This document shows, in pieces, positions 35,572-44,870 of a stretch of 64,000 nucleotides of DNA. The stretch spans positions 13,578,001 to 13,642,000 of the forward strand of contig OZ059898.1 of assembly GCA_964057225.1 (NCBI GenBank), given 5' to 3'. The DNA is from Auanema rhodensis. Taxonomy: Eukaryota > Animalia > Nematoda. The position numbers and the translations under genes were made by a program. The notes below the pieces were generated by a model. That model was not told where the DNA came from and ran no database searches. It saw only the letters and a list, made by a program, of their open reading frames with translations. Numbering within the stretch: the first letter of the stretch is position 1; the number at the start of each line of letters is the position of its first letter.

Positions 35572-38500
35572 ATGATGATATTGATCGTAAACCTCTTTTT
35601 GTAAGTTTCTATAATTTTTAAATTAAGTTTTATTTGTTTTTTAATCAAAAACAGCCCATTTATTCTATTTACAATAAAATTACTTTTCATTTCCTCTCAA
35701 AGTTCAAGAATACTTTAGCCAATCCTATTATTTATCAACAAGATATTTCCTTTAAAATAAATATTTTGAACATTTATCTTGATTATTCATGTTTTTTTAT
35801 TACAAATAAAGAGAAATATGAACAATATCATGTACTTCAAACGTTCAATATAACTTACAAACATATGTTTTTTTGAATATTTAATCTGATTCACCAACAT
35901 TCAACTTCAAATTTAATATGAAACTTGACACATTATCGATCATATTCACTTTTAATAATTATTTGAATTTAGATTTCAATTCATACAAATTAGCTTTTCA
36001 ATTTCGAAAATTGATACTCTGATCAATAATCTATCGAAAAAACCGCCAACTGATAATGGCAGTCAACCTTTGGATGTTCGATTGGGCATGTATCTGGAAA
36101 GTCTGGGAAACTTTCGATCGACAGAGATGGTAATTTGAACTTGAAGAAGAGTACGATCTTATTTAACATCATCTTCATTTTAGTCATTCGATGTTGATTT
36201 GTATGTTTACATGTCTTGGAAGGATCCTCGGTTAGCTCATAACCACACGGATTATGTTCTTGTTAGTGATGATGAGATCAGAAAGCAATTATGGTAAGTC
36301 CATCCAAATATCTTTTGTTGAAAATGGATAATGAAAGTTATTTAAATATCTGAAGAGAAAACGGACAGAAAACACAGAGAGAAAGAAAAAGAGAGAGATA
36401 AAAAGAAGGTCGAAGCATTCCGGATATTCAGGAAAATCCTTAAAAACAAGAAGAAAATATAATTCTGTTCTTTCATACGAATAGCCTGTGTATTCTTTAT
36501 TCTATCCTCATTATCCTATTCGTTAGAACTAATTTTTGGAGAAAAAACTTTTTTTTTTAGAAAATTGAATAAATTATAGCTTCGAACAGACACAAATATT
36601 CGATTAGATGTAATACGTATAGCTAACTTATGGCTTTTCAGGCTACCTGATTTATACTTTGCCAATGCCCGTGAAGCTCATTTTCAAGAAGTTACTGTAC
36701 CTAACTTCAGCATGTTCATATCTCCAGATGGAACTGTAGCATATTCTCTTCGATGTACATTGACCGTCGCTTGCAGCTTAGATCTTCGGTTTGTTATTGA
36801 ATTCTAAATCGTTGAGCTGAGGAGACAAACAATTCTTTTTGCAAGTTTTATCAAGCTGATTTTTTCAGGTTTTATCCAATGGATTTACAAGTATGCTCCA
36901 TACGTGTACTAAGCTGTAAGCTTTAAACTCATGAACTTATTCTTTATTCCGTTTTGTAATTCAGATGCATACGTAGCTCGACAGATGAATGTAAGTTGGT
37001 TCAGCAGTAATCCAATACGTCACAATCCGGAAATTGGATTGCCGGAATTCGTGATAACAGACGTCGCCAAAGGCTACTGTAATGGTACTTATCGATATGC
37101 TCTGATGCCTGGATCTTACAAGATTGGTCAGTAAAGCAGATCTTCAACTTTATTTTAACTTTATGATTAATGTTTCAGATGAATTCAGTTGTTTGGCTGG
37201 AAAAATGTATTTATCTAGATCAATTGGATATAATTTGGTTCAATCTTATATACCCACAGGATTAATTGTTATGATTTCTTGGGTTTCGTTTTGGATTGAT
37301 CGAAGAGGTTAAAATTTATTTAAAAAACTTCTTTATAAATTTATAAATTTCAGCTGTTCCCGCTCGAGTTACTTTAAGTTTCACAACTTTGGTGTCTTTA
37401 ACAACTTTGGTATGTTGCTGTAATTATTTAAAAATATTGTTTTCTTCTTCAATATTTTGTTGATGAAAAAACATTTTTTTCAGGGTAATGGCCTTCGTTT
37501 TGGGTTGCCTCAAGTCAGTTATGCAAAAGCCATAGATCTTTGGTATGGAGGTAATGATCTAAACATCAAAAAAAATTTAAAAAATAAAATTTCTTGCAGT
37601 TTGTATGTTATTTGTTTTCTGTGCTCTACTGGAATTCGCTATTATCAATAGTTATATGAGAAAATCGGAGAAGTTCGATCAAATCGCAAAGCGAGCTCAG
37701 AGCATCTTACAGGGCAGGAGAAGTACTTTAACACTTAATTATCAAAAATTAATTTTAAATTATGTTAAAGGTAGAGCAAGTCGGATAGATGTTCCTGAAC
37801 TGGATGCAGCCCAACTTGATGAAATTATGGAAGAGAAAAAAAGCAATGGATTTAACTTTATTGATGAAACAGCTAGAGATGACATCACTCCGTCTAGTTA
37901 TAAATGTTCGTTTTTTGCTTTAATTAGTTTTCGAAAACTTATTTATCTCAGTGTATTTATTGAATTATTTATCAATTGTGTTATCTTCTTTAAAAAAATA
38001 AAATTAAAAACATTTAGTGTTGAAAAGGAATAAAATCAAATCGTCTCCTCGGTTTCCTGAACATCTTCGGACTGAATTCAAGCTCAGCACATTTGTGAAG
38101 AATGGCGATATTCGAGTGACTGATACAGGTTTTTAACTAAATAGCTTCTATAAGAACATCTTCATTGACACGGAAACTCTTTATAGTAATGCGAGAATCC
38201 ATTGATTCAGCTCCACGTTCCTTATATGACAATGTATCGCCGTCATGGAGAGATTTGAAAAAATCTTTGTTAGCTGATGACTCTAGTAAAGAATCAGGTT
38301 TCTATACAAAGTATATGAATGCATAGTTATATTGAATACTATTTTCAGATGACGATCCTTGGGAAATGATGCCAAAAAGCCGGCCGTCTGTTGCTTATGG
38401 CCTTGAGAGCGACAATCGAAAATTTTCTATTGATCCAGCTGCTGCTCAAAATTATGCACAGGTATATATGCTGACTATATTTTTTCTTGACATAGCTCAC

Positions 38501-39247
38501 CAACTTCCTTACTTATATAAGATGCCCCAAAATGAATTAGATGCAGAAAAAACAACCGCATTAGCGCTGAAACGGATACAAAATGAATTTTGAGCAAGCT
38601 GCCCACCCACACTACCAGCACTACTCCGTTGAACACTCAATAAGACTTCAAAACGCGGCACATTTGAACATGACATGAGCATTGACTCAGAAACTTCATT
38701 TTTGCAAAAAAACCTGTAATCACATAACTATCAGTAATTTCAAAAGTATGATGTAGTTGTATAGCTAGAATATAGTCAGTAACTGCTATAGTTATGTGAG
38801 TACTTTATGAGTACAAAAACAGAAGAATTAATTGAAAAAAGCAAAAATATTATTTAAAAAATTATATTAATTATGTGCATAATCAGAATATATATATTTA
38901 TATAATAGTATATATGGAATAGAAATATAATATACTATATGTATATAAAGACTAATATACAAGACAATGATAAAAACGATTTTTAAATAGAATTTTCTTT
39001 TCTTTCCACCCCCACCCCGCCAAAAAAAAAATAAATACTATAGGCTTTTACTATATTTCTTCAATTTCAATTCAATTTTCAAATTTTTCAGATCTCTAAA
39101 TCTTGCTCAAGATATGCATTGCGCATTGATAAGATGTGTCGTTATGGTTTTCCTTTAGTTTTTCTTGGTTGGAATATATGGTACTGGTGGTATTATCTTG
39201 TCTATAATCGATCATTTTGTCCAGATAATGCATGTGACCGTTATTAA
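35572..39247 (+). CDS. Cys-loop ligand-gated anion channel subunit (resembles nematode LGC-34; orthology not verified)
   Basis: Signal [34 protein letters not shown], Cys-loop [16 protein letters not shown]1 [18 protein letters not shown], anion-selective AVPARVTL in M2, M4 [21 protein letters not shown]; stop TAA 39245-39247. Confidence 0.93.
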
Positions 39248-40576
39248 GCTAATGTTTCTATACATTTCATAGGTTTCTAAATAATTTTATATAATTCATA
39301 TTATATTATATATATATATATATCGTATAGTACATATGATATACATATTTATGTTTTTTTTTGTTTGTTTGGAGCAGGAGGTGAATGAGAGTTTCTCTTT
39401 CTTTTTATTTTAACTTTACAACAATAATAATAACAACAACTTAATAACATTTCATTTTCATGTTACATGTTTCATGATATCATACTACTTGTGTTTGTTG
39501 TTATTTTTGCTCAGAACTTGAATCTCATAAACTCTTCATACCTGTCTTCCTCCTTCTCCTACTCCTTCTCCTTCTCCATTTCATAAGTATACTATCCTCT
39601 TTATACTTTTCACTCATTCATACCTTGCCTTACTCCCATTCCCCTCTCACTCCCCAAGTGTTTCTTTCTCTCATCATATTTTATTTTTGTTCAGAAAACC
39701 ACCTAAAATCAGGAACATTTCTCTTCTCAAAATATAAATATCAAATTAAATTTTAACTAAAACATAAATTACTAAGTCTAATTAAAAAAATATTTATATT
39801 TACACATTTCACATGCTCTAACCTTTTTTGAGAGAAACATTTCAATAAACAAAATGTTTTTTTTTGAAGATCTTATCTCAAATCCATTTTTAACATAATT
39901 TTCTTTTTACTTTTGTATAATTTCGAAGATCGGAAATTATGATTTGAAAAGATTTTCGATTAAAAATATTCTTAATTCATGAGAGGCTACGGACGAGAAG
40001 AAGGAGGATGGGAGCTCGATTTCGTGGTAAGAAATGAAAAAGAGAGAGAGAGAGATGTTGCATCTCCCCTTCTCTCATCTCTTACTGTAAACCCTGAGTC
40101 ATTTTTTCTGGTCTTCTTATGAATAATTCGGTTTTTTTATTTGAAATATCCTGCTTGATCTCTGATGTTTGTGATTGGTTTTAATATAATGGGTGAAACG
40201 TTGAACACAGCGAAATAGAACAATTTTAGGAAAAACTCTTTTTTTTTCTTTTTTTTTCTCTCTTCTTTTTTTTGAAAAGCTTGTTCATTCAAAGAAAAAC
40301 GTCATAACTAAATAAAGAAATTTTTATTATATTATCAATGTATTTCATTCATAAAATCACAAGAAAAATATGAAATGAGAATATAAACAATGTATTTGTT
40401 GTTCTAAAATTTTTCAAAAAAATAAAAATAAATATACACGTAATTGAAATGATTATGATCGTTATGATGTTCTTTCAATATACATAATATTAGTAATAGT
40501 TAATTTATAATATTATTATTAATTATTATTATCAATTATTATTTCCATATGTACATATATTTAGATTCGATTTCAT

Positions 40577-43500
40577 TCAAATTACTGGATTTGATATCAA
40601 TGGTGGTTCTTCTTCATTCGTATATTTACTTTTATTTGAAGCAAATGATATGGATCGAGCTTTGCGTGGAACTTCACGAGGACACGTCCAGTCGTATTGA
40701 GATTGCGAACGGAAAGTCTGAAAATATTTAGTTAAATCATACTTTTTTTTAATTTAATTGGTGCCTAAAGAAAATAGTCAAAGAATTAACCTTCTTATTA
40801 GCTTCGACAGCAGCACATAGCGTTCCATTTCGCATTTCACTCAAGACCAGGTTAAATGCTCTTGTTAGCATATCATTAATCTCATATGGTGTACATCCAT
40901 GTGATTTAAATCCTTGATCTCTAAAATACTATATATGTTAACTATATCATATAAATAATATATAAATATATGTAAATGATAATTTTATATGAAAAATGAA
41001 ATCCGATATATAAACATATCGGAAATGAAAATTCAACCGTTCAATTGCATATCATCTCATATAATTGATTATGTGACGTGTATCAGACATCACGTGAATG
41101 ATTTCCGTCATATAATTCCGGACGTGAAAATAAATCGTATATATGCTAATTTAAGAATAAATTAAAAACAATAACTTGCCTGAGGGTATATTTAACGATA
41201 GTAGACACTACACGGCTTCTTATATCTTTCCACTGTTCAACAGTAAAATGAACATTCGAATAGAAATTTGCTTCTCCCATCCTTCGTCCCATTTCACGAA
41301 TATTATCTCCTCGACCTTTGTTGGATATCCTGAGGTAATCTTGTTAAGAATTACTAAGTCAGAAAATGCGATGTGTGTGTGTGCATGTGAGAGAGAGAGA
41401 GAGAGGGAGAGAGACAGAAAGACAGAGAAAGAGAGAGGAGGAAATGAAAATGATACTAACCATCTAAGCACTTGTTCGATAAATAATCCAACACGTTCTC
41501 CTGTATTTTTCACACTTTGATGATCTTCATACTGCTGCTCATAATTTGAATTACCAACAATAGCAGCAGCTAGTTGTTTATATTCTTCACAGAGCTATAA
41601 AAATATAAATTTTCAAATAAAATCAAAAAATTTATAAAACTTACAGTTAAAATGATATCTATGCCTAACGAAGTCTTTATCGGTGCAATGCTTTTGAGTA
41701 CAAAATCAGCAACTCGTGGCCGTATAAATAAATTTTTTGACGTTGTAACCGTAACACTCTTCAAACTTTGTCGTTGCTGTAACAATGATGATAATGAGCG
41801 ATAATCTCTGATTTGCATAAATTTGTTGTTTTCATGGCATATTCAGTTTGAAAAATAATTAAAACCTTATTAAAACTTGGCCAATGATAAAAGAGCAGCC
41901 AATTAGTTGTACTATGAATGACGAGTAAAAGATTTGAAGCATCAGTTAAATAGTATGTATTCATGAAGCGATCAATATCACCATCAGCTGGATCTCTAGA
42001 AATTATAATAAATTAATATAATTATATTATTTACATGTTTGTTTATTTCTTATTTTTTTGTTTTTCAATAAGAAATGTAGCTGTCAAGAAAAGAAGCCAA
42101 AAATGATGAATATTATGAATGAAATAGTATAAAACAACTTACTCTACGCTTTCACCATAACCAAGTAATTCAAGTAATAATGTATTAAACATGTATAACA
42201 TATTACATAAAATGAATTTAAAGTTTAAAAGCTGAAAATATGAGGAAATAACCATTATACAAGCAACTTGTATAGAAAATTTATATTATTTTAAAACTTA
42301 CAGACAACCGAAGTGGAATATTTCGTTTCATATGAGCATTTATGTGCAAATTTCCAACTGTTCGTTGATTACAAACCTTAAATTTGATTTTTCAATAATT
42401 TTTGAAACAGCACAAGTTGTTTTAAGTTTTTAAGAATCAAACTTACAATAATAGTTTTTATTGTAAGAACTGTTAACACAATAATTGGAAGAGGAGCTCG
42501 AAATATGATATCAGGTAGGAAGTGAACAACTAAAATATTGTATCATTCTTCATGGAAAAATGTTTATTAAGAGGTACAAACCGAATTTGTATTGACGTGA
42601 TGAAGTGCTGTTGTATGGCTTGAGAAGGGTTGATAGCCGATAACGAGATTGTTTGGTCGGCTTAATTTCAAAACAGGGAACTAGAAATCTTTCGAATGGA
42701 ATTGGTAATAAGTTTAAAATAGATGCTCCAATGATGATGCAAGCACATATCCAAAAAACTCCGAATTTCGCTTTTCGTGTACGTTGTTCCAGAGGCTTCG
42801 TAACTGCCCAGTATCTGGAGCAATGAATAGATTATCCAAATTAAGGCAGTAACTCAGAAATGCTGCTGCTTGCAAGACGAGTTTGATTGAATAATGTGAA
42901 AACGTACCTTTCAACAGTGATGGCTAGAACTTGCCAGATTGTGCAGGACACGCAGAATGATGCAAAAGGTTGTAAGATGAATAAAACATAAGCCATAGTA
43001 CCATATGTAGGTGGCATTCCATAAATAAACGATGGAATACCGTATGTAGCTATAAGTTGATTTCGTATTTGAATATTGAATCTCTGAGATTATTTGACTA
43101 CCTAAGCATGATAGAAGATATAATGAATCCCAGATGCATATCATTCCAAGATGAACTGCTAATCGTTTTGAGAAAACACGTGAGCCATAGATCTGAAGAA
43201 TAATTGGCTTTGTTTCGTAAATGAGGAGGAGGAGTAGGAGGACAAATATGATGAATGAAGATGAAGCTATTGAACAATCAAAACGAAGATTTACCTGTAT
43301 GAGCAGTAGAATACTACCTGTTAAGCCTAATGTAACAAGTGTCATGGTTATTACTCCATTATAACGATAACTATAAATGAATTGATTACTCATTTAAGAT
43401 ACATTAGAGAGACAGATATGACGAATTCAGAAAACAAACCTGAAATTCTTGTATTCCTTGAAACTCTTAGCCATTGGAACAGCTAAGTGACCAGCTGAAC

Positions 43501-43585
43501 TTGAATAGTAAACTTCAATATCAAAGCACCAGTCCATTTCAGGGAATTCGACCTTTGGATATTCAGTGGCATTTTCGATCACCAT
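40577..43585 (-). CDS. Chimeric peptide-receptor-like 7TM GPCR plus C-terminal globin-fold domain (GLB-33-like architecture)
   Basis: ATG 43585 after a TTGCAG acceptor. TM1 GVITMTLVTLGLTGSILLL, TM2 HLGMICIWDSLYLL, TM3 CTIWQVLAITVERYWAVTKPL, TM5 DIIFRAPLPIIVLTVLT, TM7 DASNLLLVIHSTTNWLLFY. These are followed in frame by a ~150 aa helical globin-like domain and a tail ending NPVI* (TGA 40577-40579). Confidence 0.82.
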
Positions 43586-44399
43586 TGTGGTGACAACTGC
43601 AAGAAGAAAATACGAATAAAAATTAATGAAAAACAGAAGAAAATAACCGAAGACCAGATAAAATTAAGAATCAAGCAAAAGAGAAGAAGGAGAAGAAGAA
43701 GAAGAAAGAGGGGAGGAGGAGGTGAGAGAAAATATAAAATGAAAAAACAATAGTATGAGATGATATATATATAATACAATGCTAAGAAGATAATGAGGAA
43801 AATGAATGTGAGGAGAAAATAAGATTTTTTTGTGAAAAAAAAAAACTAAAATTTCGAGATATGATGCAATAAATTTAATAAGAAATATGATGATGTGTTA
43901 AACTTTTTTAAAAACTTTTTTTAGCTGAGAAATTGAAATATGATAGTATATGCTCACACATATCGAATATGGATAGTGTACTTCAGATGATATATTTAAA
44001 AATTCACGAAGAAGTATCGAAGATTAACAAACAGAATAGATAAAAGGAAATGTCGGAAACCATCGAAATCGTCTAGAGCTTGAAGAAGCTGAAGTTAAAT
44101 GATTATGAAAAGCAAACTCCATTGTTGCAGACATTCAACGTCACAGATTTGCTTGAAAACTGAGCGAGCGTGAGAACGTGAGCTTTCATGAGCAAAGAAG
44201 AGTAGGAGAGAATCGGTTTGTGTGTGAGTTTGCATATAAAGGATTTTCTTCACTGTGTTATTTTTCAATGAAATCAACCTTGTGAGGTCTGAAAGCACAG
44301 AATGATAAGCTCCTCCTCCCTAATTTTCGTTTGCTGAGTTCAAAGCATAGAAGGGAGAAGCATAGAGTACAGTGACAACTAGAGAAAGAGAAAGCGACG

Positions 44400-44457
44400 A
44401 AGAGAGAGAAAGAGAGAGAAAGAGAGAGAAAGAGAGAGAAAGAGAGAGAAAGAGAAA
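44400..44457. repeat. 10-bp tandem repeat (AGAGAGAGAA)x5
   Basis: Five exact consecutive copies at 44401-44450. Confidence 0.95.
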
Positions 44458-44870
44458 GTAAGAATGATAGACAGAGAGAAATAGACAGAAACGAGAGAAC
44501 TAAGAGATTCGATGAAATAGAAGATGAAGAAGAAGACCTCTAGCTATATCTTGACTTCTAAAAGTCAGAACTTCAACTTGAAATAAAATAAAAAATTTCA
44601 AAAGCAATTTCATTTCATATCTCTTCTATCAGTTCAAAACTAGTAGTCACCTGTCATTGTTAGGAATTCAACAAAATTTAAAAATAAAATAATATATCCA
44701 TATGAAATTTAATGTACCTATACTATAAATAATATGCAATAGTTGGTGCTTGTTCTCTTTACTGGCAACTAAAAATATCCAAATGGGTATTTAAGAACTT
44801 TATTTTCTGAATGAAAATTTGATAAAGTTTTAAAATATTAAAATTAACTATATAGCATATGTTTAAATAT

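What the first reader, a model, noticed from the sequence alone, without database searches (positions are those of the whole stretch)
41221..41330. Proximal heme-ligand His(F8) replaced by Asn: candidate heme-less pseudoglobin sensor
Seen: in the putative F helix (DNIREMGRRMGEANF) the position matching the G-x-x-H motif is an AAT (Asn) codon at 41266-41268 (minus strand), one base from CAT (His). By eye the CD1 Phe and any distal His/Gln at E7 are also missing (QLAAAIVG; SVKNTGER). Knowledge: His F8 is the near-invariant globin residue and, as I recall, is retained in C. elegans GLB-33; non-heme globin folds act as sensors elsewhere (Bacillus RsbR). Inference: the domain may have lost heme binding and become an adaptor or ligand pocket on a GPCR tail, or may use an alternative ligand such as the nearby His in NVHF.
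Basis: partly seen in the sequence, partly recalled or inferred. Interest (0 to 1): 0.8.

Follow-up and report, generated by a model that had tools for sequence, protein, structure and literature searches.

The report
Receptor-tail globin without haem histidine
A nematode membrane receptor ends in a well-conserved globin-shaped domain in which the histidine that normally holds haem is an asparagine, so the domain probably works without haem; related worms show the same loss.

Summary
The minus-strand codon at 41268-41266 is AAT (Asn). It lies in exon 12 of a 14-exon, 583-residue gene (43585-40577) that encodes a 7TM receptor with a 230-residue C-terminal tail.

In a 31-member family alignment the Asn sits in the l-G-x-x-H column. 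That column is His in 10 members. It is Asn in both Auanema species, Tyr in strongylids, and Ala or Val in Caenorhabditis.

The Asn is not a sequencing error. JU1783 has the same AAT, with nine synonymous differences in the surrounding 21 codons. Tail dN/dS is about 0.05 with synonymous sites saturated.

The gene is not glb-33. It belongs to a separate, X-linked orthogroup that one database entry names C39B10.1.

My best reading is an ancestral haem-sensing globin tail that lost haem ligation in the Auanema, strongylid and Caenorhabditis lineage but was kept as a structural or regulatory module. Haem loss itself is inferred, not shown.

This scan had already noted the chimera on this window (s1-419467).

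The parts
40577..43585 (-). Whole gene: 14 exons, 583 codons, 7TM receptor plus C-terminal globin-fold tail
   Evidence: The exon model was built from the sequence. The annotated JU1783 orthologue has the same 14-exon structure; ten exons match in length and four (1, 11, 13 and 14) differ by 2-9 bases. The two proteins are 90% identical.
41866..43585 (-). Exons 1-9: rhodopsin-type 7TM part, with an E-R-Y motif after TM3 and N-W-L-L-F-Y in TM7
   Evidence: The orthologue P0001 carries a precomputed PF00001 hit. dN/dS against JU1783 is 0.012.
41645..41776 (-). Exon 10: linker plus globin helix A and the start of helix B
   Evidence: Helix positions come from the AlphaFold model.
41461..41594 (-). 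Exon 11: helices B to E. C2 is Lys (41579-41577), CD1 is Ile (41561-41559), E7 is Thr (41504-41502), E10 is Arg
   Evidence: Family alignment and column table.
41180..41329 (-). Exon 12: EF loop, F helix, FG corner and G helix. Its donor site is GC (41179-41178) instead of GT
   Evidence: In JU1783 the same 150-base exon has a GT donor.
41266..41268 (-). AAT, Asn465, at the proximal-ligand position F8
   Evidence: The column is His in 10 of 31 family members.
41248..41250 (-). CAT, His at F8+6 (FG corner, in N-V-H-F)
   Evidence: 12 of 31 members have His here, nine of them members that also keep F8 His.
41230..41232 (-). TGG, the nearly invariant G-helix Trp of the Q-W-K-x-x-R motif
40791..40920 (-). 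Exon 13: GH loop and H helix with the family-wide motif E-M-x-x-G-x-L-C-A-x-V-E
40577..40717 (-). Exon 14: low-confidence C-terminal extension and stop codon
   Evidence: pLDDT is below 60 in the model.

Best explanation
The gene encodes a peptide-receptor-like 7TM protein of the orthogroup that one database entry names after C. elegans C39B10.1. Its intracellular C-terminal tail is a complete 3-on-3 globin fold.

The ancestor of this family had a haem-competent globin. Toxocara still has C2 Pro, CD1 Phe, E7 His and F8 His. In the lineage leading to Auanema, the strongylids and Caenorhabditis the proximal histidine was lost. In Auanema it is Asn, one base away from His.

In the window species the distal His, CD1 Phe and C2 Pro are gone as well, so the domain most likely no longer coordinates haem. 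It is nevertheless kept under strong purifying selection. The strongest conservation lies in the E-helix-to-H-helix half and in two family-wide motifs, Q-W-K-x-x-R in helix G and E-M-x-x-G-x-L-C-A-x-V-E in helix H. These motifs are equally conserved in His-bearing and His-less members.

I infer that the tail acts as a haem-independent structural or regulatory module of the receptor. It would either dock on the receptor's cytoplasmic face or bind a partner through the G/H surface. The original gas or redox input has been dropped.

Shown here: the fold, the residue at F8, its conservation, the orthology and the purifying selection. Inferred: loss of haem binding and the adaptor role.
For: Sequence and gene:
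- The codon and the gene model.
- The closest relative, P0001 from Auanema sp. JU1783, shares the 14-exon structure and the downstream Cys-loop channel neighbour.

Conservation of the Asn:
- JU1783 has the same AAT codon amid 9 synonymous differences in 21 codons.
- dN/dS is 0.012 for the 7TM part and 0.05 for the tail, with pS near 0.7.

Fold:
- The AlphaFold model has pLDDT 80 and pTM 0.71.
- All of the top 50 Foldseek hits are globins.
- Pfam Globin scores above its gathering threshold in the Toxocara tail (24.3 bits) and the Dracunculus tail (22.2 bits), against a cut-off of 22.
- Apart from designed helical repeat proteins, the tail profile's listed PDB hits (E up to 10) are all globins.

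Family pattern:
- The column table and gene tree show F8 His in clade III, Steinernema, Bursaphelenchus, Pristionchus and Mesorhabditis spiculigera.
- F8 is N, Y, A or V throughout the 13-member clade that holds the window, which has 99% support.
Against: - Haem binding was not measured.
- GLB-33 itself has non-canonical CD1 (Val) and E7 (Ile) (PMC2228317) and, as I recall from Tilleman 2015, still binds haem, so only the F8 change is strong evidence.
- The fold model is of the JU1783 orthologue, not of the window protein. The spliced window protein had no reference that could be handed to the tools.
- No Pfam Globin hit exists for the Auanema tail or for single window exons.
- The F8 assignment lacks a residue-level structural superposition, and one pairwise alignment disagrees.
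- The name C39B10.1 rests on one database name plus X-sized contigs in C. briggsae and C. remanei. The link to the X chromosome is from my own knowledge.
Confidence: 0.62

Rival explanations
1. The domain still binds haem, or another tetrapyrrole, through a non-His ligand. Candidates are the FG-corner His six residues after Asn, or the family-invariant Cys of the H-helix L-C-A motif. It would then still act as a gas or redox sensor.
For: - The domain is strongly conserved and keeps its full fold.
- Tyr at F8 in strongylids and several clade IV members could in principle ligate ferric haem, as in Hb M variants (my own knowledge).
- The conserved Cys residues in helices B and H are present in all lineages.
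Against: - Asn, Ala, Val, Gln and Phe at F8 cannot ligate iron.
- The FG His and both Cys residues are equally present in members that keep F8 His, so they did not arise as replacements.
- C2, CD1 and E7 are degraded together in the window species.
Confidence: 0.15
2. The former haem pocket has been re-used for a different small hydrophobic ligand such as a lipid or another metabolite. The tail would then be a new intracellular ligand sensor on the receptor.
For: - The fold and its helices are retained while the pocket-lining residues changed to other hydrophobic or polar residues (Ile, Thr, Asn, Arg at E10).
- The B-to-D region around the pocket entrance is the most variable part between the two Auanema species.
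Against: There is no direct evidence. The pocket residues differ between His-less lineages (N, Y, A, F), which argues against one shared new ligand.
Confidence: 0.13
3. The Asn is an assembly or sequencing error, or a strain polymorphism, and the true residue is His.
For: AAT is one base from CAT. Reads could not be inspected.
Against: - An independently assembled genome of another Auanema species has the same AAT codon, although synonymous sites are saturated between the two.
- Eight DNA runs from two studies hold all sampled 31-mers of the stretch, though they may be the source of the assembly.
Confidence: 0.02
4. The tail is a decaying remnant heading for loss, a pseudo-domain without function.
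For: The canonical haem residues are lost. Some database orthologues are truncated after helix E or G, although these are probably partial gene models.
Against: - Tail dN/dS is 0.05 with saturated dS.
- The stretch from mid-helix E to the end of helix H has few changes between the two Auanema species, 8 in about 112 residues.
- The G and H motifs are conserved across nematode clades III, IV and V.
Confidence: 0.03

Closest known systems
C. elegans GLB-33 (Y75B7AL.1), the GPCR-globin chimera
   Same: - The architecture is the same: an N-terminal 7TM receptor-like part of about 350-370 residues followed by a C-terminal globin domain.
- It is restricted to nematodes.
- Its distal side is non-canonical, with CD1 Val and E7 Ile (PMC2228317).
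   Different: - GLB-33 keeps F8 His. As I recall from Tilleman et al. 2015, which I could not read here, it binds haem.
- It is a different orthogroup. Its C. briggsae orthologue is CBG06424, whereas this family's is CBG17255.
- No GLB-33 was recovered by a single-sequence or a profile search with this family.
- A first-reader note says this genome has its own glb-33 elsewhere (s1-401414). I did not check that.
C. elegans T19C4.5, a globin-like gene with Asn at F8
   Same: A nematode globin-like sequence with Asn in place of His at F8. It was left out of the C. elegans globin set (PMC2228317).
   Different: It is not fused to a receptor. Its C. briggsae homologue keeps His, so the change there is species-level. 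Here it is fixed in at least two species and belongs to a clade-wide loss.
Neuroglobin and cytoglobin (best structural matches)
   Different: Sequence identity is 11-15%. Both are free-standing haem proteins with His at F8 and E7.
Bacterial non-haem globin sensor domains (RsbR-type, stressosome)
   Same: A globin fold used as a signalling module without haem and without the proximal His. This comparison rests on my own knowledge and was not tested here.
   Different: They are bacterial, N-terminal to a STAS domain, and show no detectable sequence relation. Here the haem-less state can be traced, within one animal orthogroup, to haem-type ancestors.

Membership tests
Globin fold (3-on-3, Pfam PF00042) | Helical sandwich A to H that superposes on solved globins | tested here: met
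Globin fold (3-on-3, Pfam PF00042) | Sequence match to the Pfam Globin model above the gathering score | tested here: not met
   There is no hit for the window exons or for the Auanema tail. Orthologues do pass: Toxocara 24.3 bits and Dracunculus 22.2 bits, against a cut-off of 22.
Haem-binding globins | Proximal His at F8 | tested here: not met
   Asn in the window and in JU1783. The same column is His in 10 of 31 family members.
Haem-binding globins | CD1 Phe and E7 His or Gln | tested here: not met
   Window: CD1 Ile, E7 Thr. JU1783: CD1 Phe, E7 Ile. GLB-33 also lacks both, so this feature is the weaker criterion.
Haem-binding globins | Bound haem (Soret absorption) | not testable with these tools
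   Needs the expressed protein.
GLB-33 orthogroup | Orthology to Y75B7AL.1 / CBG06424 | tested here: not met
   This family's C. briggsae member is CBG17255, while the published glb-33 orthologue is CBG06424. No GLB-33 appeared among the hits at E of 0.001 or better.
GLB-33 orthogroup | 7TM part followed by a C-terminal globin domain | tested here: met
C39B10.1-type nematode GPCR orthogroup | Groups with the family in a tree that follows the species tree, with shared tail motifs | tested here: met
   The search recovered 35 members and then a sharp drop in score. In the tree the window is sister to JU1783 with 100% support, inside the clade V group. The C. elegans gene name itself was seen only as a database label.
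Rhodopsin-type GPCR (PF00001) | Match to 7tm_1 | tested here: inconclusive
   A precomputed PF00001 hit is listed for P0001 and for most members, marked weak for P0001. A single window stretch of 160 residues gave no hit.

The most novel reading that the evidence does not exclude
Nematodes have a second, undescribed GPCR-globin chimera family beside GLB-33. Its globin tail has become a cofactor-free module, or one that senses a new ligand, yet it is still essential to receptor signalling. If so, C. elegans would carry a hidden haem-less 34th globin fold on an orphan receptor, and the family would be a natural series from haem sensor to apo-globin adaptor.
Probability: 0.3. Interest if true: 0.75.

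Novelty: new variant of a known kind. Interest (0 to 1): 0.55.

Why it matters
A 2026 review-type statement (PMC13331133) says glb-33 is essentially the only globin-containing chimera in animals. This locus belongs to a second receptor-globin family found across nematode clades III, IV and V.

The family contains members with a canonical haem pocket and members in which the proximal His is replaced by N, Y, F, Q, A or V, while the fold and two surface motifs stay conserved. That makes it a ready-made comparative system for two questions. What does a globin domain do on a GPCR tail? How does a haem sensor turn into a haem-free module?

It would also explain why the C. elegans member was never counted among the globins. 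The published screen reported F8 His in all 33 accepted globins and left out T19C4.5, which has Asn at F8.

Tried and rejected
- Pfam on single exons found nothing.
- A word search with the 65-residue stop-free stretch around exon 12 found nothing.
No read-level check of base 41268, of the splice junctions or of the GC donor was therefore possible.
- My first guess was that the Met four residues upstream (G-R-R-M) was F8. I rejected it once orthologues showed the His column at the Asn.
- My first model of the exon 9/10 junction was wrong. I corrected it from the JU1783 gene structure.
- phmmer of the Dracunculus tail against PDB sequences gave nothing useful.
- The tail-profile search of PDB was topped by designed helical repeat proteins, which I regard as composition artefacts.
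- GLB-33 sequences could not be retrieved by a single-sequence or a profile search, so there is no direct alignment with the GLB-33 globin domain.
- Tilleman et al. 2015 is not held in the library.
- The spliced window protein has no reference, so it was not folded or searched whole. The JU1783 orthologue stood in for it.

Full report
**What is at the coordinates.** Read on the minus strand, 41329-41180 is a 150-base exon.

**Gene model.** The exon is number 12 of a 14-exon gene running from the ATG at 43585 to the stop at 40577.
- Every splice site is canonical except the donor of exon 12, which is GC (41179-41178).
- Exons 1-9 encode a 7TM receptor, with an E-R-Y motif after TM3 and N-W-L-L-F-Y in TM7.
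- Exons 10-14 encode a tail of about 230 residues.
- I corrected my first model of the exon 9/10 junction after seeing the orthologue's gene structure.

**Relatives.** Single exons hit nothing in Pfam, and a word search with the exon 12 stretch found nothing.
- The exhaustive search with the 77-residue exon 5 found 18 proteins. The best, P0001, is 99% identical over that exon and 577 residues long.
- P0001 is an unnamed protein of Auanema sp. JU1783. Its gene (L001 3001-5592) has the same 14 exons; ten have the same length as in the window and four (1, 11, 13 and 14) differ by 2-9 bases. Its exon 12 has a GT donor.
- The convergent downstream neighbour, a Cys-loop channel gene, is shared. The two genes are therefore positional orthologues.
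- A word search with P0001, and then with a 22-member family profile, returned the same sharply bounded set of 35 nematode proteins. The next hit is a single weak unrelated GPCR.
- One member is labelled 'Protein C39B10.1' in its record, and the Toxocara member is named 'GLOBIN domain-containing protein' by UniRef.

**This is not glb-33.** Hoogewijs et al. 2007 (PMC2228317) describe GLB-33 (Y75B7AL.1) as follows:
- It is 542 residues long, with a 372-residue 7TM extension.
- Its C. briggsae orthologue is CBG06424.
- It has CD1 Val, E7 Ile and F8 His.

This family's C. briggsae member is CBG17255, and the Caenorhabditis members have Ala or Val in the F8 column. The C. briggsae and C. remanei members lie on contigs of 21.54 and 21.50 Mb, which I recognise as their X chromosomes. 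That fits C39B10.1 and not glb-33, which is on chromosome V; the chromosome assignments are from my own knowledge. An unchecked first-reader note says this genome has a separate glb-33 elsewhere (s1-401414).

**The tail is a globin.**
- Pfam Globin passes its gathering score in the Toxocara tail (24.3 bits) and the Dracunculus tail (22.2 bits), against a cut-off of 22. It gives a weak hit in a Pristionchus-like member.
- A profile of 30 tails searched against PDB sequences (E up to 10) listed only globins, apart from designed repeat proteins.
- An AlphaFold model of the JU1783 tail, built with the 30-sequence alignment, has pLDDT 80 and pTM 0.71 and shows helices A to H.
- All of the top 50 Foldseek hits are globins.

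**Which residue is F8.** In the family alignment the Auanema Asn sits in a column that is His in 10 of 31 members: Toxocara, Parascaris, Dracunculus, both Steinernema species, Bursaphelenchus, two Pristionchus-type members and Mesorhabditis spiculigera.
- The residues before it follow the canonical hydrophobic-G-x-x-H pattern of the F helix.
- In the model Asn114 lies three residues before the end of the F helix (102-117). The G helix starts at 123, and the near-invariant Trp is 12 residues after the Asn.
- The offsets of the neuroglobin superposition fit Asn114 on His96.
- One pairwise phmmer alignment of the Toxocara tail to haemoglobin beta is shifted by 10 residues. I reject it because it would put F8 at the start of the F helix.
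- A residue-level superposition was not available, so this assignment is strong but not absolute.

**State of the rest of the pocket.**
- Toxocara has the full canonical set: C2 Pro, CD1 Phe, E7 His and F8 His.
- The window species has Lys, Ile, Thr and Asn at those positions. JU1783 has Ser, Phe, Ile and Asn.
- The His in N-V-H-F, at F8+6 in the FG corner, is His in 12 of 31 members. Nine of these also keep F8 His, so it is not a compensating ligand.

**Distribution of the loss.** A maximum-likelihood tree of 31 members follows the nematode species tree.
- His is retained in clade III, Steinernema, Bursaphelenchus, Pristionchus and M. spiculigera.
- The 13-member clade with 99% support that holds Auanema (Asn), the strongylids (Tyr) and Caenorhabditis (Ala or Val) has no His at all.
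- Further losses occur in M. belari (Gln), Panagrellus, Aphelenchoides and Meloidogyne (Tyr), and the cyst nematodes (Phe).
- Parsimony needs at least 4 changes between His and non-His.
- The Auanema Asn is therefore one instance of an old and recurrent loss, not a private oddity.

**Is the Asn real, and is the domain constrained?**
- JU1783 has the same AAT. The 21 codons around it carry nine synonymous differences and one replacement, Met to Leu.
- Between the two species pS is about 0.7, which is saturated. dN/dS is 0.012 for the 7TM part and 0.05 for the tail, with 0.048 for the globin core.
- The stretch from the middle of helix E to the end of helix H has 8 changes in about 112 residues. 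The B-to-D region is the variable part.
- Across the whole family, the most conserved tail positions in the 30-tail alignment are the G-helix Trp, Lys and Arg of Q-W-K-x-x-R and a Val of the H-helix motif. The full-length alignment adds the Glu, Cys and Ala of the H-helix motif E-M-x-x-G-x-L-C-A-x-V-E. His-bearing and His-less members are alike in this.
- A sequencing error or a decaying remnant is therefore very unlikely.

**What could not be done.**
I worked beside those places and sent none of their letters to any search tool.
- The run index shows that eight DNA runs from two studies hold all sampled words of 40500-43700, but these may be the source of the assembly. Four runs guessed to be RNA hold 0.32-0.45 of the words. 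That is about what the exons would give, but it is no proof of expression.
- The spliced window protein has no reference, so it was not searched or folded whole.
- The GLB-33 sequence and the Tilleman 2015 paper were not obtainable.

**Mechanism.** I commit to the following, at about 0.6 confidence. The family began as a receptor with a haem-type globin tail, plausibly a gas or redox input as proposed for GLB-33. In the common ancestor of Auanema, the strongylids and Caenorhabditis, or shortly after, the iron ligand was lost. The domain persisted because its main job is structural or regulatory and is carried by the conserved G/H surface. That job would be docking on the receptor's cytoplasmic side or binding a signalling partner.

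The rivals are haem bound through another ligand (0.15), a new small ligand in the old pocket (0.13), a decaying remnant (0.03) and a sequencing error (0.02).

**Novelty.** GPCR-globin chimeras are known (GLB-33), and haem-less globin folds are known in bacteria. An F8 Asn in a C. elegans globin-like gene (T19C4.5) was noted in 2007 and led to its exclusion from the globin set. I found no paper describing the globin tail of the C39B10.1 family; the only full-text mention of the gene is an allele in a screen list. A 2026 paper still calls glb-33 the sole such chimera in animals. The A. suum receptor modelled by Tilleman et al. may belong to this family, but I could not check that. I class the finding as a new variant of a known kind, of moderate interest.

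Noticed in passing
window 41178-41179 (minus strand): The intron after exon 12 starts with GC (g-c-a-a-g-t) instead of GT, while the JU1783 orthologue has GT at the same junction. Read-through would hit a stop after 13 codons and remove the conserved H helix, so the GC donor is presumably used.
   Followed up: partly
window about 35960-39230 (plus strand): A multi-exon Cys-loop ligand-gated ion channel gene lies convergent with the receptor gene. It is syntenic with the neighbour of the JU1783 orthologue (PF02931 and PF02932 on L001 5814-8383).
   Followed up: partly
window 41380-41440 (minus strand, intron 11) and 44400-44560: There are long CT/CA dinucleotide microsatellites inside the intron and again upstream of the gene.
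   Followed up: no
I regard this as a chance trip of the filter, not as evidence of anything. I did not send it to any search tool afterwards.
   Followed up: no
family alignment A1/A2; window exon 13, 40791-40920: The H-helix motif E-M-x-x-G-x-L-C-A-x-V-E contains a nearly invariant Cys, and a second conserved Cys sits in helix B (the L-C motif). Both are kept whether or not F8 is His. They could mark a redox-sensitive site or a binding site.
   Followed up: no
P0041, P0009 (Toxocara, Parascaris): The ascarid members have the most canonical haem pocket in the family. The published A. suum 'GLB-33-like' receptor may really belong to this orthogroup rather than to GLB-33. I could not check this because the paper is not held.
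   Followed up: no
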